Positions 1 to 62,340 of a stretch of 64,000 bases of DNA are shown in pieces. The first letter of the stretch is position 1; each line of letters begins with the position of its first letter. Origin of the DNA: Octopus sinensis (lineage: Eukaryota); NCBI RefSeq assembly GCF_006345805.1, contig NC_043011.1:37522464-37586463 (forward strand), read 5' to 3'. A model generated the notes under the pieces. That model was not told where the DNA came from, did no database searches, and saw only the letters and a program-made list of their open reading frames with translations. Made by a program: the position numbers and the translations under genes.

Positions 1-724
1 CGTTTTTGGACTGTGTTTTGGTGGCTCATTTTTGTACAACCATTGTGCTGAATGTTTATGGTTGTTGTATTGGATCCATGTCTCATCACATGTTACAATT
101 CGACTCAAAAATGATATATATTGGTGACGAGAAAGTAGCACAATGCAGGCTCCCAAGCGTTGCTGTTTCTGAATGTCATTGAGTTCATGTGGGACTCATT
201 TATGCAACTTTTTCACCATACCGATTTGAAATGAGTCAATATCATTTGCTTGCTAACACCAAACAACCTCAATAATCCACAGACTTTGAGATGGATCTGA
301 CTCGATGGTAGCTTTCAGTTCGTCTTTATCCACCTTTGTTTTTGGTCGACCGCGTTCTTCATTTGTGAGTTCAAATTTACAAAATCGAAATTCTGCAAAC
401 AAATTTGATACTGACTGCTGTGTAATAACATCAGAATGAAACACTTCATTAATATCTCGAGCGGTCTGTGGTGCTGTATTTCCAAGAAGGAACTCATATT
501 GCAAAACTGTACAAATTTCAGACTTACCCATCTCTAAACAAAAATAGCAGAGAACGATTTATAAATACTTTATAAAGCGCAAAATGAGTTGGAATAAAAA
601 CATAGATGTGACAACATTTTAACAAAAAGAATGAAGATTGTCAAAATACAATGATGACGCAAAATGAGCAACTGTCAAAGTTTACCATATACTGTACTGT
701 ACGTTTCATATTTGACGGCCTAAT
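1..724 (-). mobile_element. Mariner-family DNA transposon relic (5' TIR plus decayed transposase N-terminal half; runs off the window start)
   Basis: ORF 253-531 resembles the mariner HTH N-terminus (LQYEFLLGNTAPQTARDINEVF...ERGRPKTKVDKDELKATIESDP). After a frameshift the minus strand continues with WVPHEL and RIVTCDETW (first catalytic Asp). Candidate TIR TATTAGGCCGTCAAATATGAAACG at 702-724 abuts a (TA)n tract. Confidence 0.88.
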
Positions 725-6129: not shown

Positions 6130-8105
6130 CACGGTGGCGATACGTATTCAATACAAAAAACAGATCAAAGTGGTGGAAAGCGGTCAATACAGAAGATTGA
6201 TGTTTCCGAAAGAGCGAGGAATTCATTTTTACCTTAAGCAATTGTGATGACCCATGGTGGAAGTTCGCTGGGTGGTTCTAGTGAGTTTTTGTGAAATGCT
6301 CGGTTTTATAATGCCTGTTAGGTGGTCAATCTAGCGTAGCGTGACGTCATCAATGTTTTGACCAATCGTTTCGTTAGGTGGCTTTAACCAAGTGGAACGG
6401 GACGTCATCATTATTTTGACCAATCGCTGCATTATAACTCCCTCTTGTTTGTTTCCTGTCTTGACCAGTCGCTTCGTTAGTCAAGCATAGCGGGACGTCA
6501 TCCAGATTCTGCCCCATCACGACTTATAGCTACATTAGATCTGCCCCCTGTCTGTACTTGTTAGGTGACTATTCAGCAGAAAAGGACGTCATCAATATTC
6601 TGACTAATGACTGTCCCCTGTTTGTATCCTGTCCATTCTAGCAGAGCTAGACGTCATCAACTTGTTGACCATCAGAATCGGGTCTGACCCATAGCTGTAT
6701 CGTATGTATCAGGGTCAGATTTGCACGAAAGAATTTTTTCCTTTTTTACTAAGGCATATTTCCGTCAGAGTGAGTGTCTGTTTGAAGTAGCGGCCGTGGT
6801 GAAATTTGGTTCTCCTTTTCGGAGGACTTATCTTTTGTTTTAGTATTCCTGGCCCAGGGTGTTTAAACTTGGTCTAAATTTTTTTATGAAATATAGTTCT
6901 TTATTTTGGCGTTGTGTGAAGGTGCGTTGTCACTGAATTTATAGAGCGGGTTAGTTGTAAATTTCGGATTTACATTTCCAGCACATCTATCTATGTGTCC
7001 GCTGACCGGTATTTTGCGGTAATCAGGGTTTCTAATTTGTGATTTATGCACCGCCATCCTGTTACGTAAGCTATTTTTTGTATGGCCTATATACTGCCTA
7101 TTGCAGCCTGCGCATGTTATGACGTAAATTAAGTTTTCTGATGCGCAGGTGAAGTTTGTTCTAATGGTGAACTGGTGGCCTTGTTCCAGTATAAATTCTG
7201 ATCCTTCTTTCAAGATGACACAGATTCCGCAGTTGGGCCTTCCACATTTTCTAACTGCTGGTTTTGTGGTTGATGTTGAGTGCAGTGTAGCTTGGGTTAA
7301 AATCCTTTTCAATGATTTTGGTTGCCGTTTACTTTTAATGATGGTGTGTGTTTCGAGGATCCGGTTCATCTTTGGGTCTCCCTTTAGTAGGGCTGTGCTT
7401 TGTAGTATGGTGTTGAAGGCCTCATTGTTGAGTGGGTTGTGTGTAGAGATGTAGGAAGGGTTTTTAATTGTTCTTTCTTTTTTGGTTTTGTTTGTCTCAG
7501 GTCTTCTATACTTAATTTAAGTACCCGTTGGATTGCACTGTCTATTAGGGGCTGTGGATATTTCTATTTGTGAGTGTGGTTCTAAGTTCCTGGAGACGTG
7601 TGTGTCGGGTGTTTGTGTCTGATATTATGGTGCAAATCCTTCTAGCTAAACAAAAAGGGACATTCATTCTAGTGTGTCGTGGGTGGCATGAATTAAAGGG
7701 TAGGTACTGTTTAGAGTCTGTCGGTTTATAGTAGATATCTGTCTCTATTTTGTTGCCGGTTTTCTTAATGAGGATGTCTAAAAATGGTAATTCTTTTTCG
7801 TTGAGGTCCATCGTGAATTGTATATTGTCATTTATTCCATTTAATAGAATTTTAAATTCCTCAAGTTTCTCTATGCCTTTGTCCCAGATGATGAAACAGT
7901 CATCGAGGTATCTTTTCCAGTTGTTATGGATAGGTGGCGAAGGTGTTTCCATATTTCTCGAGTGTCATCCGGTATAGTATTTTCTCGAGGTATCCCATCA
8001 CTAGGTTGGCAAAAGATGGTGCAGTACGCGTGCCCATCGCTGTTCCCGATCTTTGCCTGTAGAAATCATTGTCAAAAATAAAATAATTGTTCTCTAAAAT
8101 GAATC
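6130..8105 (-). mobile_element. Penelope-like retroelement, 5'-truncated and frameshifted: RT C-terminal half, GIY-YIG endonuclease and 3'/pLTR region (probably Neptune-like)
   Basis: Minus-strand frames give YRQRSGTAMGTRTAPSFANLVMGYLE, KRYLDDCFIIW, LPFLDI, YYKPTDSKQYLPFNSCHP (7545-8105), then CGRPNCGIC...TCASENLIYVITCAGCNRQYIGHTKNSLRNRMAVHK (6884-7369), ending ...FRPSLN. RT precedes the endonuclease. The 3' boundary near 6130 is approximate. Confidence 0.93.
6343..6658. promoter_or_regulatory. Array of five GACGTCATC (CRE/ATF-like) motifs, several paired with CCAAT-like boxes, in the Penelope 3' region
   Basis: GACGTCATC at 6343, 6401, 6494, 6585 and 6650, most followed by TTGACCAATC-like sequence. 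The motifs are seen directly; function is inferred. Confidence 0.45.
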
Positions 8106-8188
8106 TAAGTCCTTCTATTATAAGGTCTTTGTTTATGCGATATATATATATATATATTATATATATATATATAATATATATATATATA

Positions 8189-8235
<47 letters not shown>

Positions 8236-8353
8236 GTATATGTGTCCATGTTATATACATTGATACATACAGAGACAAAACAGACACACTCTTTTAGCGA
8301 ATTAAAGGATATATTTATATAAATTCTTTTCACAGCTAAGGTTACACCGGCGT

Positions 8354-16309: not shown

Positions 16310-17636
16310 GTTGCAGTGTTATTCGAACATTAATCTTGCATTACTCATATGATATAGTAAATTCATAAAGTAGTACCGTAATAATAGCGAAAAGTAAAGA
16401 ACTCACAAATTCAGTGACAAACTTAATTATTGAACAGTGGAAAGCAGGCAAAAGTTACAGGAAAATATCAGAGACCCTTTGTATTCCATTTTCTGCCATA
16501 TCTTCATTTATTCAAAGATATAAAAAAATCGGGAACTGTTAAAATCAGAATAAGATCCGGTGCACCACGCAAGATTTCCCCTAGATCTTTAACAAAAATG
16601 AAGCGAAGAATCGGAAAAAAAAACGCAATGATCACCAGAAAGGAGTTGCAAGAAGAATTGTTAGCTTCACAGACCAGTGTTACACTACGAACAATCAGCA
16701 ATGAACTTCATAGGAATGAACTGAAATCATGGTCTCCTAGAAAAACTCCGCTGTTGACTAAAAGGCATAGAGATGCCCGTTTAAAATTTGTTTATGAACA
16801 TAAAGATAAATCTGATACATTCTGGGAAAATGTTCTAAGGACAGACGAGTCGAAACTTGAATTGTTTGGACGAAATTCGCGTAGACATGTTCGTAGGAAA
16901 GATGGTACCGCCTATTCGCCGAAAAACACAATTCCTACTGTAAAGTTTGGAGGTGGCAACATCATGGTGTGGGGGTGTTTCTCTGCAAATGGTACTAGCA
17001 ATTTACATGTGATAAGTTGGTAGAATGAATGCAGAGATGTACCAAAATATTTTGAACAATGATTTATGGGACTCTGTAGAAAAGCTCCAGCATTGTGATG
17101 GGTCTGTTTTACAACAGGATAGTTATCCTAAGCACACGTTGATGTCTACCAAAAAATGGATTGTCTATCACAATATAAAATTATAAGAATCGCCAAGCCA
17201 ATCTCCTGATTTGAACCCCATTGAAAATTTGTGGCATTATTTGAAAATTAAAATTCCTTCAAGAGCCCCAACATGCATTGCAGATTTCAAGAAAATTTGT
17301 CAAGAAGAATGGGAAAAAATTCCTAAAGAAACATGCAAGTCATCGATTAAGAACTACAAGAATAGATTGGTTGCAGTGGAACTGAATAATGGTTATGCTA
17401 CGAAGTATTAAATCATAATTATCAGTTATTTATGTTCTATACGAATACTTTTTTCACCTCTATATATTTATAATTGAATATATATTCCTTAGTTACTATA
17501 ATTTATTAGTTTCTTTCGCATATTCTTAGTTTATGCATGTGTATGCAAATATAGTATTGGTATATCCCATTTATGTTCATTAGAATTTAAATAAATAAAG
17601 AATTTTTACATGTACAAATAATTATTTCCCCCACTG
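16310..17636 (+). mobile_element. Tc1-family DNA transposon with DD34E transposase pseudogene; right TIR present, left TIR not found
   Basis: Coding from ~16384 (start apparently ATG>ATA, AKSKEL...) through [38 protein letters not shown], then 34 residues to E in SPDLNPIENLW, ending GYATKY* at 17411. Frameshifts near 16525 and 17015 and one internal stop. The right end reads CAGTGGGGGAAATAATTATTTG on the minus strand and is followed by TA. Confidence 0.95.
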
Positions 17637-18404: not shown

Positions 18405-18470
18405 TTTTATTTTTTATTTTTTATTTTATCTAGTTTCAGCTCACGAGCTGTGGCCATGCTGGGGCACCGC
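18405..18470 (-). mobile_element. Tail-only retroposon fragment
   Basis: Minus strand reads GGTGCCCCAGCATGGCCACAGCTCGTGAGCTGAAACTAG followed by a (TAAAAAA)n-like tail. Confidence 0.65.
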
Positions 18471-18628
18471 ATATATATATAATATAATATATATATAATA
18501 TATATATATATATAATATAATATACCGGAGTAAACACATAAATGTGAAACAAGGTGGAAAAAAGAGTACTCAAATACTAGTGGTAGAGTAATATGCTTTA
18601 TTTTAAGCAGCAGAAAATTCAACAAAAT

Positions 18629-18666
18629 CTGTTACTCTGAGTTTCTCGTTGCCGTTCATCAGACAG
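18629..18666 (-). ncRNA. Minimal type I hammerhead ribozyme motif
   Basis: CTGT-CTGATGA-ACGGCAACGA-GAAA-CT-CAG-AG-TA-ACAG: stem I CTGT/ACAG, intact core, stem III with GUA cleavage triplet. Stem II is weak (CG-GCAA-CG with an A.A closing mismatch). Confidence 0.7.
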
Positions 18667-19040
18667 TTTTTGCTAGAATGGAACCGATATATCAATTCAA
18701 TCTAGACTCTTACAACCGCTACACATTTAAAAAGAAATGGGCTTGTTTGATTGGCCCTTTAGAAAAAAACGGTCAATCTTCGAGCGATAAACAAAAAGGT
18801 CAAAACTTTCTTCATTAATGTCATATGTATTTTATTCAATGTAAGGTTTTTTCCTCGGATTTTATAATTTTTATAAGCTTTTTATATATATATACATATA
18901 TTTTTGACCTTTTTGTTTATCGCTCGAAGATTGACCGTTTTTTTCTAAAGGGCCAATCAAACAAGTCCATTTCTTTTTAAAGGTGTAGCGTTTGTAAGAG
19001 TCTAGATTGAATTGATATATCGGTTCCATTCTAGCAAAAA

Positions 19041-19078
19041 CTGTCTGATGAACGGCAAAGAGAAACTCAGAGTAACAG
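19041..19078 (+). ncRNA. Minimal type I hammerhead ribozyme motif
   Basis: CTGT-CTGATGA-ACGGCAAAGA-GAAA-CTCAGAG-TA-ACAG. The core is intact; stem II has one more mismatch than the 18629 copy. Confidence 0.65.
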
Positions 19079-19300
19079 ATTTTGTTGAATTTTCTGCTGC
19101 TTAAAATAAAGTATAATATGATATATATATAATACAAATAAGAAAATGGAGAAATAAAATTTGGTTTGTTCATCACCCCGTTTAATACAATAAATGACTT
19201 AATTGCACTGCAATTAAAAACACTTATGTATTAAGAATTTGGGTACTTTACCAACAGTATATTGGATAAATGCTATCCCATAGTGGGTTATACCCATAAC

Positions 19301-30732: not shown

Positions 30733-30777
<45 letters not shown>

Positions 30778-30851
30778 TATATATATATAAACATACATAT
30801 ATATATATATATGATTATATATATATAAACATACATATATATATATATATT

Positions 30852-31621
30852 TACAATATCAGAGACCTGGGTGTAATTGTTGATGACGATCTCAGTTGGA
30901 GTGCACACATCAACAATAAGGTCGATATAGCTCGTAGGATAAGTTCCTGGATCTTAAGAACTTTCCGATCCAGAGAACAAGGTGTCATCATACCACTTTT
31001 CTCCTCCTTTGTACGGCCACACCTCGAATACTGCTGCCCACTGTGGTCTCCCCATACATTACAAAACATCTCGAGGATTGAATCACCCCAGAGGGCACTC
31101 ACTAAACGAATTGAAGGCATGGCTGCTCTCTATTATTGGGATCGTTTTAAAGCCTTGAAACTCTACTCTCTCCAGCGCCGCCGTGAGCGGTACATCATTT
31201 GCACGATGTGGAGAATATACCGCCAACTTTGCCCAAACGACCTGAACATTAGCTTCAAGGTTCATCCAAGACTGGGATCACGAGCCATACGTCCCCTGCC
31301 CAATTCAAGATCACAGCATACACTGCAACATAATTTCTTTTCCTCAACAGGCCCTGCCCTATTTAACATTGTCCCGAAAGAGATCAAAGAGGAAAAGAAT
31401 CCCATCAACTTTAAACGGAGTCTGGATAGATTCCTTCAAAGAATACCAGATAAGCCACCTATAATTGAATACACCTCACCCAACAAAAACTCACTACTTG
31501 AATGGACCATAAACAACACTTGACTTAAACAGGATTCAAATAACCCTATCAGGTGGTGCTATTTAGTAAGACATAGCCTGGATCAATCTTTGGTCGAAAC
31601 ATATCTAAGTTTATCTAAGTT
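30852..31621 (+). mobile_element. CR1/L2-like LINE 3' end, 5'-truncated, with an uninterrupted reading frame
   Basis: Open frame 30852-31523: [18 protein letters not shown]...FVRPHLEYCCPLWSP...LYSLQRRRERY...GPALFNIVP. The 3'UTR ends in stem-loop-GAAAC plus (TATCTAAGTT)x2. TA tracts on both sides. Confidence 0.93.
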
Positions 31622-36960: not shown

Positions 36961-37302
36961 TTGACGAGGTAGCAGAATGCTACTACTTGAGTAATATTCC
37001 TTCTATTTCTTTACTACCCACAAGGGGCTAAACACAGAGAGGACAAACAAAGACAGACAAACTTGAGTAATATTCTTTCTATCGATACTGAAGTGGATGA
37101 AATGCTAAATAGACCTTCGTAGAATTTCCACTTGAAACATAAACACGGACAAAATGGCGTTACGTATTTTATCCGACGAGCTTACGACACTGCCCTCTTG
37201 CCACCTTAAATCTCCATATAATGATTTCAAAATTTTGCACAAAGTCAGCAATTTTAGAGAAGCGTAACTGCACAGCTGGTGAACGACCCCGATAATATGA
37301 AT

Positions 37303-38506
37303 GTTTATACATAAATGTGAGTTAAAATAAAACCTTGTCTGTGAGGCTATTAAACGCACTGAAGACCGCAACAGGATTTACAGATGCAAATATACTTCGC
37401 ACTGGACATCTTAACTCATCTAAGCAACAAGAAATAAATATTACGAGATATTTATCAGAAAATGATTGAATGAGATATTCAAATTTAATTTCTTCGGGAT
37501 ACAATACTGTCTATATGTAAAGTGGAACAGGATTTGACGAGTTTTGATTCTACTCTATGTATCATGTTCAGGGAATTATACATTTCTGAAGCTATAAAAC
37601 TCCCTATACTGATCATCTGAGAATTTACAGAATTAACGAGAATTTAAAGTACCACATTGTAAATAATATATAATAGATACATGTGGTTTTCAATGCACAT
37701 ATAAATGCGTCTAAAAGAGTGGATTTATTACAAAATGCTCAATAATTCGGAATATTTTATGTTAGATTATATCGACCCTGAAAGTATGAATGAATATCTT
37801 ATACTATCGATAAGCATTTGCTCGGCATCCTAAACGAAAATCCGACAAACGTGCATTAGACGTCTGCAGTTTAACCGTAACACTCGCATACTGACGCGGC
37901 CTTTCGACACGAAAATTTTCACGAATGTGCAGGAAGGCTGATATTATATCCCATTCAAGGTGCCATGCAATGGGACTCATACCACAACAATATAACAGGG
38001 AAGGATTCTTCTTACCATACACTCAGGCTGCGCCTGTGTATATTTACACTTTTATGAATACACCTTTATACATACATATAATATAAGGATGTATTTACAT
38101 ATGACTAGTGAAGGCGCTTGGTTTAATGGTTAGATTAATCAGCTTACGATCGTAATGCTGTTAGTTGGATTCACGGTGGCAAGCTCTGCCCTTCACCAAA
38201 CAAATTTTTTTCACGTTGCTCCAATCCACTCAGCTGGAAATAATGATTGGTACCTATAATTCAAAGTGCCAGTCTTGTCACATTCTGAGTCATGCTGAAT
38301 CTCCCAGAGAACTACGGTAAGCTTACACGTGGCAGTGGGGTGTTCAATTACACGTTAATCTCACGAGCAAGTTTCCCCGTTCATCGGATCAACTGGAATC
38401 CTCGTCGTCGTAACCGACAACCTGCCAATTATGTAAGAATATGAAATCCCTTTCTCTCTCTCTTTCTCTCTTTCTCTCTCTACACACACATATATACATG
38501 CATTAT

Positions 38507-38539
<33 letters not shown>

Positions 38540-38551
38540 ATATATATATAT

Positions 38552-38582
<31 letters not shown>

Positions 38583-39307
38583 GGTATATAACATTATATG
38601 CATGTATCCCTTTATATTCTCAAATCTAACAGATCGTCTAATAAACAAGAATGAAATACATACTTTGGTGTAAACATTGAACTAGATATAAGCGATCTGT
38701 GGAGCGTGGCTACAATTGGTTGGTTGAAATCCTTTACATATTTATATGTTTAAACCTAATTTATACATATCAACGTAATATACTTACATGATTCACTGTT
38801 TTGCAGTATTCCCTTAAACTTGATACTATATTTATCTAATATAAAATATTCCGAATTATTGAGCATTTTCTAATAAATCCACTCTTTTATACGCATTCAT
38901 ATGTACATTGAAAACCACATGTATCTATTATATATTATTTACAATGTGGTTGCAAGTCTACTTTGAATTCTCGTTAATTCTGTCATCTCTCAGATGATCA
39001 GTTTAAGGAGTTTTATAGCTTCAGAAATATATAATTCCCTGAACATGATACATAGAGTAGAATCAAAACTCTTCAAATCCTGTTCCACTTTACATATAGA
39101 CAGTAATGTATCCCGAAGAAATTAAATTTGAATATCTCATTCAATCATTTTCTGATAAATATCTCGTAATATTTATTTCTTGTTGCTTAGATGAGTAAAG
39201 ACGTCCAGTGCGAAGTATATTTGCATCTGTAAATCCTGTTGCGGTTTTCAGTGCGTTTAATAGCCTCACAGACAAGGTTTTATTTTAACTCAAATTCATG
39301 TATAAAC
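37303..39307. repeat. Long inverted repeat: ~470-bp arms (37303-37767 and 38834-39307) around a ~1.07-kb spacer
   Basis: Arms align by eye at roughly 90% or more, with a ~9-bp indel. Example: CCTTGTCTGTGAGGCTATTAAACGCACTGAA versus TTCAGTGCGTTTAATAGCCTCACAGACAAGG. Confidence 0.92.
38110..38430 (+). mobile_element. SINE family C variant, degenerate
   Basis: TTCACGTTGCTCCAATCCACTCAGCTG body and GGATCAACTGGAATCCTCGTCGTCGTAACCGAC tail shared with the 43270 and 53545 copies. Confidence 0.75.
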
Positions 39308-39348
39308 GTTGCGTTTTCATATCAAATAATATATAGGATGTGAAATAT

Positions 39349-54767: not shown

Positions 54768-55797
54768 AAATAATTTTAGGGAAATTTAGCCGTCCTTTCT
54801 AATTCGGTCGAATGACCGCATGAAAAACATCATCACGACCTGAATGTTAGGATCGGAAGATTCCAGAACATGTGCTATCTGACAATCGTCTCATCTAAAG
54901 AATTATTCAAAATGTCGCTATACTAATTATATATTTCTTTGCAGTATTGAGTTTTCTCTAACAGACATTATCCATTTACATTTAAGCACATTGAATTACG
55001 ATGACAAATATTCAACTCACTGTAAACATACATGATGCTGTGATTAAAACGTTTATTAAATGAAAATTACTTCTACAATAAATTCATGTCTATATCGTCT
55101 TCAGTGAGATGAAACGAAAGTGGGGATGGCAACTCTGAAATCTCAATTAATTAAAACTAAAATTAAGCATGTTGCGAGATGAAGAAAACATCATGTTATC
55201 ACCTTAAGTTAATTTTCTTTTGCACTTTCTATTATAAGGAGTGGTTGTGGTTAATTAAGAAATTGCTTTGCTCAAACCATTAAGCTTGTTAAATAGTGTT
55301 AATTGATTTAAATATTTTATTTTTCAGGACAGCATCTCTGAATTATTTTCTTTCTCACACATTATACACAGATCAATTGTTGAAGTATAGGGGAAGTGCA
55401 GTGTACATGGAATAAATAATAGATACCATAACCGTTTTACAAAAGAAAAAAAAGAAGACCAAAGTGCCACGCCAAGCCCACAAGGTAGTTTTTCACCTCC
55501 AACAGAGTTAAAAGGAGTCTATATTTTATATATTCTTTCAGATGCTGCCTCCTGCTTTTTCGTTTTGTTTTCTTTGTATTTTATGTATGGTGAAATGGTT
55601 AAATTTGCCAGTAACTCCAAATAGAATTCGCGATGAATAATCAAAAGAAATTACAGAAAGTTTCAAGTATACATACATACATAAACACACACACACACAC
55701 ACATACACATATACATATATATATATATATGCACAAATACATATGTATATGTATATATATATGTGTGTGTGTGTGTATGTGTGTGCCTGTATATAAG

Positions 55798-57405: not shown

Positions 57406-57438
57406 CAGATAGATGAACACGTACGTACACACACACAA

Positions 57439-58200
57439 TGTTGCCCCTACTGTATATATTGACGAAGAAGCATTACAAACTGTTTTTTTCACTTATCGTG
57501 GTTCTATTGCGTCGAATGATACTAAGATGGATAAAGAAATTGCGTCCAGAATCAGGAAGGCCAATTCCACTTTCAGTAAGCTTTACGATGGGCTTTGGAC
57601 TGCTACGACGTTTCGTTGAAGTCGAAAGTTGATGGATTCAAGTCATTGGTTTTCTCATCATTACTTTATGTGTCAGAAAATTGGATCCTACACCGTAAGC
57701 ACATCAACCACTTTGATGTTTTTCAAATGCTATACTTGCGATCTATCTCCAACATAAAAACCGAGTGGCCATATTTCTGACAGTAAGGTGCTAACAAAAT
57801 ACAACATATCGAGTATTGAAGCCATCTTCATCAGAATACAGCCTAGATAGTCAGGTCATCTCTCGCATATGAGCGGTATCAGAATTCCGAGGCAAATTCT
57901 CAACAGAAGGTCATTGGGAAGGTTATTCTTGCGTTTGAAATACAAACTAAAACACCATTTGGTGCGATGCGACTTTCCTATTTGTTCTTGGAAAAACAAC
58001 AGAACGCAGGACCTGGCACCAGTTCTGTTTCTTTCAGTTCAAAGATTTGAACAAATTTGACTCCAATATCGGGACCAACTTCGTGTGAGCATGCTGGTAA
58101 AAACGCTGCACCTTTAAATGAAAAGCTTACATGTAATTGTGGTTTTGCGGCACAGAGCAAAGCAGGCCATGCCGTCCACACAAGAAAACAAGTAGTAAAT
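57439..58200 (+). mobile_element. RTE-clade LINE relic: RT C-terminal region and terminal Zn-finger-like motif, frameshifted
   Basis: FTYRGSIASNDTKMDKEIASRIRKANSTFSKL, SSLLYVSENW, GHLSHMSGIRIPRQIL and TCNCGFAAQSKAGHAVHTR across shifting frames. Confidence 0.82.
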
Positions 58201-58244
58201 AATCCACAAACAATCGTGCAAACTGATTTCCCACTTTGTTCCAT

Positions 58245-58439
58245 TTACTCTCTTTGCTTGTTTCAGTTATTTGACTGTGGCCATGCTGGAGAACCGCCTT
58301 TAGTCGAGCAAATCGACCCAAGGACTTATTGTTTTTAAGTCTAGTACTTGTTCTATCTTTGTCTTTTGCCGAACCGCTAAGTTACGGGGATGTAAACACA
58401 CCAGCATCGGGGGGACAAACACAGCCACACAAACATATA

Positions 58440-58492
<53 letters not shown>

Positions 58493-58645
58493 GACGGGCT
58501 TCTTTCAGTTTCCGTCTACCAAATCCACTCACAAAGCTTTGGTCGGCCCGAGGCTATAGTAGAAGACACTTGCCCAAGGTGCCACGCAGTAGGACTGAAC
58601 CCCGAACCATGTGTTTCGTAAGCAAGCTACTTACCACACAGCCAA
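58245..58645 (-). mobile_element. SINE family A, full length
   Basis: Reverse complement of the 10181 copy, including the internal (TA)n. Confidence 0.9.
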
Positions 58646-60065
58646 AGTCCCTCACAGGCGCCAAGAGATACGTGCGTGTCCATAGAGCATGATTAACGCT
58701 TTATTTTAGTGAAGATTCATTTGTCGATGACGACGAGAGAATCCATCATAACAATTCGGAATTCTCTCTCCTCTTGCTTTGTCTGAAAATAATGCAAATT
58801 AACCCTAATATATTTTTCTTTTGTGTATTTATTTGCAATGGTCGAAACATCAGATTGGAAATCTTCAAACCTACCGTAAGTGTCCCTCTATATATATCAC
58901 ATGTTATATATGATTCTATATGCATACATAAATGTGTGATTTCGCATGTGTGGTGTGTGAGTACGCTCGCGGGCCCGAATGCACTTTGCCTTGTGTTTAG
59001 AGTGTTACAATTACGATCACAAAACCGTGTCATTGTTATTCATCAGGAATTTCTACTTCGGAGATGGCAAAACTATTGTCACCATACACTTGCACAATCA
59101 TTTTCCGCACTACGTTATTCTTATTCCTACGTTTTCGAATGTGTACATTCGAAAAGAGGAAGAAGAGAAAGAAGAAGAAGAAGAAGAAGAAGAAGAAGAA
59201 GAAGAAGAAGAAGAAGAAGAAAAAGAAGAAGAAGAAGAAGAAGGAGAAAAAGAAGGAGAAAAAGAAAACAAAGAAGATGAGGAAGAGAAAGAATTGGAAG
59301 GAAATGTGTTTATAATAACGATGTTTAATAATTTTTAGCAAACTAATTAATCATAGAGGACACAAATCTCAGAGGAAACGTTCTCATTTTAAAATAAATA
59401 GCTGTATGCAATGGAATCTTTGTGAATGGCCCCCGTTGACCTAAAGTCACAACGGGACTAAAATCATGCAAATATGTGACCTTATAATTGTTATGGTGAA
59501 ATTCCTGTGTATAGAATATGTGAAACACGTAATTTCTTTCTTTTTATGAAAAGCGACGCGCTTGCAGAATACGTATCATGTAAATAGGACAAAATACATA
59601 ACGATATATCTACTGCTTTTTACATCTTGAGTTAAAGTCCCGCCGAATAGACATTGCCTTTTAAAATTTTGGGGGACAATAAAAGGAGTTCCAGTTGAAC
59701 ACTGGGATCAGTGGCACTGATTTATTCTCAGCCCTAAAATTGATATCTTTCTGTATCAATGTCGAACTTATTGTTACTTTATGAGAATATGATGTTTCAC
59801 ATTTCTGCCTTAGATTAATTTGTAAAATACACGTTCTATTTAGGAGTCTGATCATTTAAATCAGTATTTGTTAAACAATTTTTATCTACCACTATTCTGC
59901 TGCTATAACAAAAACTGTCTCTAATATTCAATGCTCCTATAAATTATAAGTCATTTATAAATGTAATATCAGGCGAGGACAAATAATGTATTAAAAATTT
60001 ATCATTGACATGGCTTAGGGTTTTACGTGCAAGGTTTATATATATATATATACATATATATACAC

Positions 60066-60097
<32 letters not shown>

Positions 60098-60126
60098 GAA
60101 TATATATAATATATATATACATATAA

Positions 60127-60164
<38 letters not shown>

Positions 60165-60293
60165 GTATTTATATATATAAATATATGTATGTATGTGTGT
60201 ATTTACATCTATGTATCAATGTATCTATCTATCTACATATGTATATATATATATTATATATATATACATACATACATACACACATACTCACAG

Positions 60294-60349
<56 letters not shown>

Positions 60350-61471
60350 TATATATATGTATATAAGCAATAATAAATCTCTGAGCAAGGTATAAACAGT
60401 ATCTGCACGAGATCGTGATCTATATTTGCCACCTAAATGTGGCTAAAACTTAAAGTTGATGCTACAGCAGCTTGTAGCCCCAGAAAGACATCTCCTCGAG
60501 CTGGCTATTGACACCCTATCTGTGCCCTATCAGTATTTGCAAAAGGAAGTCATCGTTCCACTCTCCAGCCTGAAGTGATACACACGGAGCCGATTTTCTC
60601 GGTATTGACCCGTCATCATATATAAATGGTGGTGCCCAAGCATGGCCATATCTCATGAGTTGAAACTAGATCAAATCAAATCAAATCATATACCTATATG
60701 TATGATTTATGTATGTAGCACTGTATCAATCACATAATCGGAATTTGCTATACACGACGGGTAACAATGCGCTTCGTTGCATTGCTGTACATTTCTAATG
60801 ATGTCATCTGGCTGGCTCTGGCGGCTGGCAAACATTCCCTCCCAACGGGAAGCCAGTCTATTGCGAGGTTACCCATTTATAGATGAAAGGACCGGAACAA
60901 TGAGAAATTAAATATTTCGCTCACCGACACACTACACAACCGATCAAATAATCAAAACCACGGTTTTGTGACCGTTATTGTATCACTCTAAACACAAGGC
61001 GAAGTGCATTCGGGCCCGCGAGTGTACTCACATACACACATGCGAAATCAAACATTTATGTATGCATATAGAATCATATATAACATGTGATATATATAGA
61101 GGGACACACACGGTCGGTTTGAGGATTTCCAATCTGATATTTCGACCATTGTAAATAAATACACAAAAGAGAAAAAATATTAGTGTTAATTTGCATTATT
61201 CTCAGACAAGGCAAGAGGAGAGAGAATTCCGAATGTATATGATGGATTCTCTCGTCGTCATCGACAAATTAATGTTCAGTAAAATAAAGCGTTAATCATG
61301 CTCTATGGACACGCACGTGTCTCTTGGCTCCTGTGAGGGCCTTTGGCTGTGTGGTAAGTAGCTTGCTTACGAAACACATGGTTCCGGGTTCAGTCCCACT
61401 TTTGAGTGGATTTGGTAGACGGAAACTGAAAGAAGCCCGTCGTATATATGTATATATGTATATAACAATGA
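58491..61471. repeat. Inverted duplication pair (58491-59029 and 60959-61443) plus a 10-bp inverted duplication (59030-59039 and 61462-61471)
   Basis: Arms align along their full length; the right arm lacks ~54 bp of the SINE CORE block. TCATTGTTAT follows the left arm and ATAACAATGA follows the right arm after a short TA-rich stretch. Confidence 0.9.
59157..59292 (+). repeat. (GAA)n polypurine microsatellite
   Basis: Directly visible; explains the poly-E, poly-K, poly-R and poly-F ORFs. Confidence 0.95.
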
Positions 61472-61828
61472 ATAAGAGGATAAGTAAATGTTAACCTTAC
61501 TTTTCAGGGACCTGATGCCAATATGTAATTGTCATACGTACATATTCACACATACGTACGCACTCACACAAACAAACATATATGTATGTACATACTCATA
61601 CATACATATATATGCTCACACACACTTTTATATATATATATATATATATACATACATACACACACACATATATACATATATGAATAATGTGTACGCAACT
61701 TTATCCTCATATACACATAGCTGCTTACTTCCATACATGTAACATAATACACACAGACACACACACACAAATATACATATATATATATATATTAAACATT
61801 TATACGTATAAATATACATACATGCATT

Positions 61829-62340
61829 CACTGCTGTAGGATTAATGACATGTGCCCGCTAAATGGAGTCTGTATAACTAAAGCTATTATTTATGAAGCC
61901 TCCGTAAATTCCATGAACGATAATAATACAGTTTCATTTCAAAGATATGTGGGTCTCATAGAGGAAAATTTCAAAGCATGATTCAACAATCACACCTTAA
62001 GTGTCAGACACTTGAATAAACGAAAAACTACCAATATCCATTTACATATGGTTCTTCAAAGAACAAGGTGTTAACCACAAGATTTACTGGAACTTCTCAG
62101 CCAAGAGTAAACTTTATACCAACGGTAGTGCAAAGTGCAGCCTTGTAATATGGAAAGAAGGCGCATCTGGATAATTTCACTCGACCCCGCTGCATGTTTA
62201 AATTCAAGAAATGAACTTTTGGGGTTATGTCCATATGTCACAAATACCTGTTATGGTTTTGCCCCACTCTACAAGTTCAATGCTAGGATTCACGTCTCTA
62301 CTACGTTCCTGCACAAGCCTTCCAATACGTTTTAACTTCC
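61829..62340 (+). mobile_element. Second Penelope-like element: decayed GIY-YIG endonuclease C-terminus
   Basis: CCRINDMCPLNGVCITKAIIYEASV...RYVGLIEENFKA*FNNH...KCSL-CNMERRRI...CLNSRNELLGLC. This is a different endonuclease type from 6884-7369. Confidence 0.82.

What the first reader, a model, noticed from the sequence alone, without database searches (positions are those of the whole stretch)
58245..61471. Footprint of a ~2.4-kb inversion made by two staggered breaks
The layout matches A-X-Y'-(inverted)-X'-Y-D. X (~540 bp) is continuous on its outer left side with the rest of a complete SINE A, whereas X' stops in that SINE's internal TA tract. On the inner side X' continues into an old SINE remnant (~60720-60990) that is cut off after X. 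A 10-bp segment appears inverted right after X (TCATTGTTAT, 59030-59039) and direct after X' (ATAACAATGA, 61462-61471). Re-inverting gives a seamless CTGATGAATAACAATGAATAAGAGG. Inverted duplications at breakpoints are the established signature of staggered-break inversions in Drosophila; here both breakpoints are readable in one window.
Basis: partly seen in the sequence, partly recalled or inferred. Interest (0 to 1): 0.72.

Follow-up and report, generated by a model that had tools for sequence, protein, structure and literature searches.

The report
Small inversion with duplicated breakpoints
A 2.4-kb stretch of repeat-rich, non-coding animal DNA was flipped long ago, copying about 540 bp at one break and 10 bp at the other; the footprint is real and can be read from this one sequence, but it is an ordinary example of a known kind of mutation.

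Summary
Arms 58470-59029 and 60959-61464 are inverted copies: 483 aligned bases, 6% substitutions, and three indels of 54, 1 and 1 bp.

Each arm keeps one ancestral neighbour.
- The left arm runs outward into a full-length SINE. The right arm stops in that SINE's internal TA tract.
- A second, old SINE runs unbroken across the inner edge of the right arm, at 60958/60959. The left arm has only its first 49 nt, cut exactly at 59029.

A 10-mer occurs once per orientation in the whole 64 kb, exactly at the two new junctions (chance about 2-4e-4). Together these features call for an inversion of 59030-61461 flanked by duplications of about 540 bp and 10 bp. This is the layout ABC -> A C' B' A' C.

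The mechanism is not settled. Staggered breaks with fill-in and end joining fit best, because junction microhomology is 0 and at most 3 bp. Replicative template switching gives the same footprint. So does insertion of an inverted copy with a 10-bp target duplication followed by recombination between the arms.

No outgroup could be reached with the tools, and genome-wide copy number is untested. I rate it a new member of a known kind, non-coding and of modest interest. Two more inverted pairs of non-SINE sequence lie in the same window.

The parts
58247..58644 (-). Full-length copy of the first SINE family (SINE1). Its head, which looks tRNA-derived by eye, is at 58644. The internal (TA)n lies at 58443-58491 and the tail half at 58247-58440. 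This element proves that flank A and arm X are ancestrally continuous.
   Evidence: nhmmer profile from 4 other copies covers positions 12-388 of 407, E 2e-111. Alignment of copies. TRF.
58470..59029 (.). X, the left arm of the inverted duplication. It consists of part of the TA tract, the SINE1 head half, 384 bp of non-SINE sequence (58646-59029) and the first 49 nt of SINE2. The left limit lies somewhere within the TA tract, uncertain by about 22 bp.
   Evidence: The 384-bp non-SINE part has only these two copies in the window.
58981..59029 (-). 5' end of the SINE2 head (profile 157-205), cut off exactly at 59029. This is junction J1.
   Evidence: nhmmer. Nothing SINE2-like was found in 59030-59500 on either strand.
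59030..59039 (-). Y', the inverted copy of the 10-bp duplication (TCATTGTTAT).
   Evidence: It is the only occurrence of this word in the window.
59040..60958 (.). Single-copy interior (C'...B'), inferred to be inverted relative to the ancestral order. It contains (AAG)n at 59154-59286 and TA-rich microsatellite at 60037-60365.
   Evidence: Inference from the junction evidence. Tandem repeats. No other copy in the window.
60776..61006 (-). Old remnant of the second, tRNA-derived SINE family (SINE2). It crosses the B'|X' boundary at 60958/60959 in register, with no gap at that boundary. This proves that X' and B' are ancestrally continuous.
   Evidence: nhmmer profile 9-204, 28.6 bits, whole-window E 1.7e-8. 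B' alone scores 14.3 bits. B' joined to the left-arm copy scores 32.2 bits. Random 102-mers reach the observed score in 8 of 1000 trials; the five best-scoring of those are hits inside the appended piece, as a true SINE2 copy would give.
60959..61464 (.). X', the right arm of the inverted duplication. It is the reverse complement of X and ends in a 22-nt TA-rich tract (61443-61464), the last 3 nt of which overlap Y.
61344..61463 (+). Partial SINE1 copy in the right arm. It covers profile 12-67 and 121-185 and carries a 54-bp internal deletion. It stops in the internal microsatellite, which is junction J2.
61462..61471 (+). Y, the direct copy of the 10-bp duplication (ATAACAATGA), followed by flank D.
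   Evidence: It is the only occurrence of this word in the window.

Best explanation
The ancestral order was A-X-B...C-Y-D. A single rearrangement inverted the segment and left both breakpoint sequences duplicated in inverted orientation, giving today's A-X-Y'-C'...B'-X'-Y-D. The new junctions are at 59029|59030 and at about 61461|61462.

The most likely mechanism has three steps. First, each breakpoint suffered a pair of staggered breaks, about 540-560 nt apart at X (one nick in the SINE1 TA tract, the other inside the SINE2 head) and 10 nt apart at Y. Second, the overhangs were filled in. Third, the ends were rejoined in the flipped orientation by non-homologous end joining.

The event is old: the arms differ by 6% plus three indels. 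It is therefore probably fixed. It lies in repeat-rich DNA with no recognisable host gene, so it is most likely neutral.

Shown here: the duplications, their orientation, which flank of each arm is ancestral, and the near-blunt junctions. Inferred: the inversion itself, the single-event origin, and the staggered-break chemistry.
For: - Inverted arms with 6% substitutions and three indels.
- SINE1 is full length only at the left arm and is truncated at profile position ~185 in the right arm.
- SINE2 is continuous across 60958/60959 but cut at profile position 157 at 59029.
- The 10-bp inverted duplication is unique in 64 kb and sits exactly at the two new junctions, p about 2-4e-4.
- Microhomology is 0 bp at J1 and at most 3 bp (ATA, within the microsatellite) at J2. 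This comes from direct reading, and it fits end joining better than microhomology-primed replication.
- Arm size and divergence fall inside the published range for Drosophila inversion-linked duplications: 46 bp to about 1.9 kb, median 321 bp, mean identity about 88%. Six inversions there carry duplications from both breakpoints (PMC1885836).
Against: - No outgroup or second individual was available, so the ancestral orientation rests on the continuity of two SINEs and one 10-mer.
- The part of SINE2 inside the arm is short and old. On its own it scores 2.9-6.7 bits. Its weight comes from extending the B' alignment in register by 14-18 bits.
- Continuity of C-Y-D has no support other than Y itself.
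- A stagger of about 540 nt requires long unwinding, a difficulty the Drosophila authors themselves note.
- The same footprint arises from other mechanisms.
- Copy number of the 384-bp non-SINE part is known only for this 64-kb window.
Confidence: 0.5

Rival explanations
1. The inversion and duplications are the same, but they arose by replication errors (fork stalling and template switching, or MMBIR). The nascent strand switched to the opposite template and back. This is the explanation proposed for the human complex variant class dupINVdup.
For: The layout ABC -> A C' B' A' C matches the dupINVdup subclass as I recall its definition; the held papers name the subclass and its mechanism but were not read for the layout (PMC5338099). 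That class is attributed to replicative mechanisms (PMC6286558). J2 lies in a TA microsatellite, which offers 3 bp of microhomology. Two more local inverted duplications in the same window hint at a recurrent local copying process.
Against: J1 has no microhomology at all, and neither junction has a templated insertion. The human cases cited had at least 3 bp at every junction. Two junctions are too few to decide.
Confidence: 0.2
2. Two steps. First, an inverted copy of X was inserted about 1.9 kb downstream at site Y with a 10-bp target-site duplication, for example a retrocopy ending in the TA tract or a captured fragment at a staggered break. Later, homologous recombination between the two inverted arms flipped the interior. 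The end product is identical: A-X-Y'-C'...B'-X'-Y-D.
For: A copy truncated at one end, ending in a simple-repeat tract at the other and flanked by a 10-bp duplication resembles a LINE-mediated insertion; this is my inference. Inverted repeats of more than 500 bp only 2 kb apart are plausible recombination substrates. The structure is fully compatible.
Against: It needs two independent events. X' begins 434 bp upstream of the SINE1 head, so it cannot be the SINE's own transcript. It has no poly(A) tail or recognisable LINE tail, only the SINE's internal microsatellite. The Drosophila study considered and disfavoured such multi-step routes.
Confidence: 0.15
3. There was no inversion. X' is simply a local inverted duplication (template switch or fold-back) placed next to unrelated sequence. 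The SINE2 continuity and the 10-mer are coincidences.
For: Two other inverted duplications in the window (37300-37767 / 38834-39310 and 18589-18805 / 18902-19118) show no short reciprocal duplication. So plain inverted duplications may be common here.
Against: It would need two unrelated SINE2 fragments to be joined in perfect register at profile position 156|157. Random appended sequence extended the alignment that far in at most 1.1% of trials, a figure that includes true SINE2 copies. It would also need an independent 10-bp coincidence of p about 3e-4.
Confidence: 0.06
4. Assembly artefact: a chimeric join at the SINE or TA microsatellite, or a mis-oriented contig.
For: J2 lies in a TA microsatellite inside a high-copy SINE, the kind of place where assemblers misjoin.
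Against: The arms differ by 29 substitutions and three indels, so they are two real, diverged copies. J1 lies in low-copy sequence. A misjoin does not create a reciprocal 10-bp inverted duplication.
Confidence: 0.03
5. A transposable element with ~540-bp terminal inverted repeats (foldback-like or a long-TIR DNA transposon) spanning 58470-61464.
For: Long inverted arms around a 1.9-kb core. A similar-looking pair exists at 37300-39310.
Against: The left 'terminus' lies inside a SINE that continues seamlessly outside the supposed element. The arm boundaries cut two unrelated SINEs. There is no direct target duplication at the outer ends, and the 10-mer sits inside one arm boundary and outside the other. 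No further copies occur in the window.
Confidence: 0.02

Closest known systems
Drosophila inversions with inverted duplications at both breakpoints: the staggered-break (isochromatid or chromatid) model of Ranz et al. 2007, PLoS Biol 5:e152 (PMC1885836)
   Same: Ancestrally adjacent breakpoint sequence is present as inverted copies at the two ends of the inverted segment. Both breakpoints contribute a duplication, as in 6 of the Drosophila cases. The arm size (about 540 bp) lies within their range of 46 bp to 1.9 kb, and the copies have decayed by substitutions and small deletions.
   Different: This segment is only 2.4 kb, against chromosomal-scale inversions in Drosophila. The duplicated sequence is SINE plus non-coding DNA, not genes. 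Polarity is inferred from SINE continuity within one genome instead of from outgroup species. The organism is not a fly. It is an AT-rich, SINE- and microsatellite-rich animal genome. I recall the first SINE as resembling the abundant octopus SINE, but no tool confirmed that.
Human complex structural variant class dupINVdup (paired-duplication inversion; Brand et al. 2015; Collins et al. 2017, PMC5338099; Sanchis-Juan et al. 2018, PMC6286558)
   Same: The rearranged order is the one I recall for this class: an inversion flanked on both sides by duplications of the opposite breakpoint sequence.
   Different: The one human example read here has a 458-kb inversion with ~280-kb duplications. Here they are 2.4 kb, with duplications of 540 bp and 10 bp. 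The 10-bp duplication would go unnoticed by read-depth methods, and the event would be called 'dupINV'. The human cases show at least 3 bp of microhomology at junctions. Here one junction is blunt.
Inversion by non-allelic homologous recombination between pre-existing inverted repeats (TE copies or segmental duplications)
   Same: Inverted repeats bracket the flipped segment.
   Different: Here the arms are not independent TE insertions. They share one SINE insertion site with private flanking sequence. Each arm lacks one ancestral flank, and a second, 10-bp duplication sits reciprocally. Simple recombination does not predict any of this.
Short-range template-switch mutations and microinversions in primates (PMC7954356, PMC8755829; seen in the search list only, not read)
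   Same: They are local events that create inverted copies or small inversions.
   Different: As I recall, those events are tens of bases long. This one is kilobase-scale with a 540-bp duplication.

Membership tests
Inversion with breakpoint duplications (staggered-break type, Ranz 2007) | Inverted copies of the same sequence at the two ends of the inverted segment | tested here: met
   58470-59029 against 60959-61464, with 6% substitutions.
Inversion with breakpoint duplications (staggered-break type, Ranz 2007) | Each copy keeps exactly one ancestral neighbour: the outer one for one copy, the inner one for the other | tested here: met
   SINE1 is full length across A-X and truncated in X'. 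SINE2 is continuous across B'-X' and truncated at the end of X.
Inversion with breakpoint duplications (staggered-break type, Ranz 2007) | The duplicated sequence is single-copy in the ancestral or outgroup arrangement and is not a dispersed repeat | tested here: inconclusive
   The 384-bp non-SINE part has only the two copies in 64 kb.
Inversion with breakpoint duplications (staggered-break type, Ranz 2007) | The interior has the opposite orientation in an outgroup | not testable with these tools
   No eukaryotic genome collection is available. ORF-based and DNA-pattern searches found nothing related.
Inversion with breakpoint duplications (staggered-break type, Ranz 2007) | A reciprocal duplication from the second breakpoint (present in a subset of cases) | tested here: met
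   10-bp Y' at 59030-59039 and Y at 61462-71. Each is unique in the window, p about 2-4e-4.
Inversion with breakpoint duplications (staggered-break type, Ranz 2007) | Junctions formed by end joining, with little or no homology | tested here: met
   0 bp at J1 and at most 3 bp at J2, read.
dupINVdup of replicative origin (FoSTeS/MMBIR) | Order ABC -> A C' B' A' C (the layout as I recall it for this class) | tested here: met
   The layout is verified here. The class is named in PMC5338099.
dupINVdup of replicative origin (FoSTeS/MMBIR) | Microhomology of 2-3 bp or more, and/or templated insertions, at the new junctions | tested here: inconclusive
   J1 has none. J2 has at most 3 bp, inside a microsatellite. 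There are no insertions. The comparison standard is from PMC6286558.
Transposable element with long terminal inverted repeats | Arms end at the element termini, direct target-site duplication lies outside both arms, and multiple copies exist | tested here: not met
   The left arm is continuous with a SINE outside it. There is no direct duplication at the outer ends. Only a single copy occurs in the window.
NAHR inversion between independent repeat insertions | The arms are independent insertions of a repeat family, each with its own flanks or target duplications | tested here: not met
   Both arms share the same SINE1 insertion site, a private 5' sequence and 384 bp of flank.

The most novel reading that the evidence does not exclude
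The event may be one visible instance of a frequent mutational class in this probably cephalopod genome that I have not seen described for cephalopods. The class would be kilobase-scale local inverted duplications and inversions. The 64-kb window holds three pairs of non-SINE inverted copies, all 94-97% identical. Such events would keep seeding long, near-perfect inverted repeats. Where those repeats are transcribed, they would fold into long double-stranded RNA, a possible substrate for RNA editing or small-RNA pathways. The events could also be polarised genome-wide from single assemblies, using truncated SINEs as internal outgroups.
Probability: 0.15. Interest if true: 0.55.

Novelty: new member of a known kind. 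Interest (0 to 1): 0.33.

Why it matters
In itself it matters little. It is an old, small and probably neutral rearrangement in repeat-rich DNA with no recognisable gene nearby.

Its value is as a clean worked example. Both breakpoints, both duplications and the ancestral polarity can be read from one sequence, because two unrelated SINEs happen to straddle the breaks. The same logic could be used to catalogue small inversions with breakpoint duplications in genomes that lack close outgroups. Collecting junction statistics over many such events could then show whether they arise by end joining or by replicative switching outside flies and humans.

Tried and rejected
(1) Outgroup through junction-spanning ORFs. 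Nine ORFs from X, C, the interior and B' were concatenated and searched against the 5.8-billion-protein collection. There were no hits, not even to themselves, so this genome's spurious ORFs are not in that collection.

(2) Outgroup through a host gene. No credible host exon was seen among ORFs of at least 70 aa; those that could be classified are transposon-derived.

(3) DNA pattern scans of metagenome contigs. A 24-mer from X gave 0 hits. The 20-mer spanning C-Y gave 11 hits, all in contigs with unrelated flanks, so they are chance matches.

(4) Organism identification through a LINE ORF. The best hit had only 68% identity and no name. The organism remains unconfirmed.

(5) An internal 'paralogous outgroup' for C-Y-D. 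The re-joined flanks were blasted against the window, and only microsatellite-driven alignments cross the join. A 57-nt relative of C at 55584-55640 loses similarity at Y, so it is uninformative.

(6) My first significance test for the 10-mer was inflated by self-complementary TA microsatellites (4e-3, or 4e-2 at TA-tract ends). I redid it with low-complexity words excluded.

(7) Other scans. ARAGORN found no tRNA in 58000-61800, and Rfam found no RNA family anywhere in the window. I looked for target-site duplications of the full SINE1 copy and saw none that was convincing.

(8) The transposon-with-long-TIRs and assembly-artefact readings were rejected for the reasons given under the rivals.
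Full report
**Context.** The window has about 34% G+C and is packed with TA/CA microsatellites and SINE copies. Its classifiable long ORFs are transposon remnants:
- a Mos1-type HTH at 256-558;
- a Penelope-like GIY-YIG at 6887-7516;
- a Tc1 HTH at 16427-17020 and a DDE_3 fragment at 17187-17408;
- a LINE reverse-transcriptase C-terminus at 30777-31520.

No host exon, tRNA or Rfam family was found. It is therefore animal, repeat-rich, apparently non-coding DNA. I recall the first SINE as resembling the abundant octopus SINE, but no tool confirmed the organism. The best protein hit to the LINE ORF is only 68% identical and unnamed.

The stretch 58470-59029 and the reverse complement of 60959-61464 align end to end. 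Over the part outside the microsatellite, 483 positions align with 29 substitutions (12 transitions, 17 transversions; K2P 0.063). There is a 54-bp deletion in the right arm and two 1-bp indels. The arms are thus two real, long-diverged copies, not an assembly duplicate.

**What the arms are made of.** I built a profile of the first SINE (SINE1) from four other copies in the window, 407 positions long.
- It matches the left arm on the minus strand from 58644 to 58247, profile 12-388. That is a full element with head, internal (TA)n at 58443-58491 and tail half.
- In the right arm it matches only profile 12-67 and 121-185 (61344-61463), ending inside the internal microsatellite.
- Both arms share the same junction between the SINE1 head and its upstream flank, plus a private 5' sequence that the other copies lack. 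They are therefore copies of one insertion, not independent insertions.
- The next 384 bp (58646-59029) occur only in these two places in the window.

**The inner side.** A second SINE family (SINE2) is clearly tRNA-derived; one copy reads ...TAGCTCAGTGGTTAGAGC... at its head. It has seven other copies in the window.
- A profile of those copies aligns continuously over 60776-61006 (profile 9-204, 28.6 bits, whole-window E 1.7e-8). It runs straight through the arm boundary at 60958/60959 with no gap at that boundary.
- In the left arm only profile 157-205 aligns (59029 back to 58981), and the match stops exactly at 59029. Nothing SINE2-like follows in 59030-59500 on either strand.
- The B' part alone scores 14.3 bits. 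Adding the right-arm piece gives 28.6 bits, and adding the left-arm piece instead gives 32.2 bits.
- Random 102-mers from the window reached the observed score in only 8 of 1000 trials. The five best-scoring of those were hits inside the appended piece, as a true SINE2 copy would give.

So X was once followed by B. That continuity survives only at X'-B'. The site 59029|59030 is a rearrangement junction.

**The second duplication.** Directly after the left arm comes TCATTGTTAT (59030-59039). Directly after the right arm comes its reverse complement, ATAACAATGA (61462-61471). Each word occurs once in 64 kb, and the match is exactly 10 bp. A naive resampling is inflated by self-complementary TA microsatellites. 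With low-complexity words excluded, and with generous positional slop, the chance is 2e-4. By base composition it is 4e-4.

**Inference.** Three independent features each mark which side of each arm is ancestral:
- A-X is ancestral, shown by SINE1.
- X'-B' is ancestral, shown by SINE2.
- The two remaining junctions carry a reciprocal 10-bp inverted duplication.

The only simple history that produces all three starts from the ancestral order A-X-B...C-Y-D and inverts the segment, duplicating X (about 540-560 bp) and Y (10 bp). That gives A-X-Y'-C'...B'-X'-Y-D, with 59030-61461 (2,432 bp) lying between the new junctions.

A plain inverted duplication without inversion does not fit. It would have to bring two unrelated SINE2 fragments together in perfect register, and it would also need the 10-mer coincidence. 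A transposon with long inverted termini is excluded because the left 'terminus' continues seamlessly into the rest of SINE1. A misassembly would not produce diverged copies or a reciprocal 10-mer.

**Mechanism.** Junction J1 is blunt: there is no shared base between the partners on either side. J2 has at most 3 bp (ATA) of ambiguity, inside the microsatellite. No filler bases are present.

This fits the staggered-break model described for Drosophila, which combines fill-in with non-homologous end joining. In that study 17 of 29 inversions carry inverted duplications of 46 bp to about 1.9 kb (median 321 bp), with mean identity about 88%. Six carry duplications from both breakpoints (PMC1885836).

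The same order of segments is, as I recall its definition, the human 'dupINVdup' class. That class is attributed to replicative template switching and typically shows at least 3 bp of microhomology (PMC5338099 and PMC6286558). With only two junctions I cannot exclude that route.

A third route gives an identical product: insertion of an inverted copy of X at Y with a 10-bp target duplication, followed by homologous recombination between the arms. It needs two events. The copy also has no poly(A) or LINE-type tail and starts 434 bp upstream of the SINE's own transcription start, so I rank it lower.

My estimates:
- an inversion of some kind: about 0.85;
- a single event by staggered breaks: about 0.5;
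- replicative switching: about 0.2;
- the two-step route: about 0.15.

**What could not be done.** The decisive test is the state of the locus in other individuals or species, and it was out of reach.
- Junction-spanning ORFs found nothing in the protein collection.
- The metagenome scans gave only chance matches.
- No eukaryotic genome collection is on hand.
- Continuity of C-Y-D has no support beyond Y. A 57-nt relative of C at 55584-55640 loses similarity at Y and is uninformative.
- The genome-wide copy number of the 384-bp non-SINE part is unknown.

**Assessment.** The specific break chemistry is the leading explanation but remains unproven. It is a new example of a known kind of mutation: small, old (6% arm divergence), non-coding and probably neutral. 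Its merit is didactic and methodological, because truncated SINEs serve as internal outgroups that let an inversion be polarised from a single assembly.

**In passing.** The same window holds two more inverted pairs of non-SINE sequence: 37300-37767 / 38834-39310 (93.9% identity, 1,066-bp spacer) and 18589-18805 / 18902-19118 (97.2%, 96-bp spacer). Neither has a short reciprocal duplication. Three such pairs in 64 kb suggests that a recurrent process may be at work.

Noticed in passing
window 37300-37767 and 38834-39310: A second inverted duplication of non-SINE sequence. The arms are 468 and 477 bp, 93.9% identical with a 9-bp indel. The 1,066-bp spacer holds a SINE2 copy (38333-38105) and a SINE1 head fragment (38021-37956). 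No inverted match of 6 bp or more lies within 12 nt of the junctions, and there is no obvious target duplication. The arms occur only as this pair in the window. It could be another inversion or duplication event, or a long-TIR element.
   Followed up: partly
window 18589-18805 and 18902-19118: A third inverted pair. The arms are 217 bp, 97.2% identical and only 96 bp apart, so they would form a hairpin. Each arm occurs only in this pair in the window. There is no short reciprocal duplication at the junctions.
   Followed up: partly
window 61399 (right arm), equivalent to 58534-58587 in the left arm: A 54-bp deletion inside the SINE1 head of the right arm only (profile positions 68-120). It arose after the duplication.
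   Followed up: no
window 55584-55640: A 57-nt stretch about 75% similar to the reverse complement of 59036-59088, the sequence just inside junction J1. Similarity ends at the 10-mer Y. It may be the terminus of an unrecognised repeat family, which would place a breakpoint at a repeat end.
   Followed up: partly
window 60615-60680: A fragment similar (83%) to 18419-18483, which the SINE1 profile matches at its 3' tail (positions 335-381). It lies in the interior of the inverted segment, on the + strand, just left of the SINE2 remnant.
   Followed up: no
window 256-558(-), 6887-8250(-), 16427-17408(+), 30777-31520(+), 57413-58060(+), 61850-62300(+): Transposon remnants. Pfam supports a Mos1-type HTH, a Penelope-like GIY-YIG and Tc1/mariner HTH plus DDE_3. 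A LINE reverse-transcriptase C-terminus has its best database relative at only 68% identity. By eye only, there is a broken LINE tail just left of the finding and a broken GIY-YIG-like fragment just right of it.
   Followed up: partly
window 59154-59286 and 60037-60365: Long (AAG)n and TA-rich microsatellite arrays inside the inverted segment. TA/CA microsatellites are so dense in the window that naive tests for inverted matches are inflated by self-complementary TA runs.
   Followed up: yes
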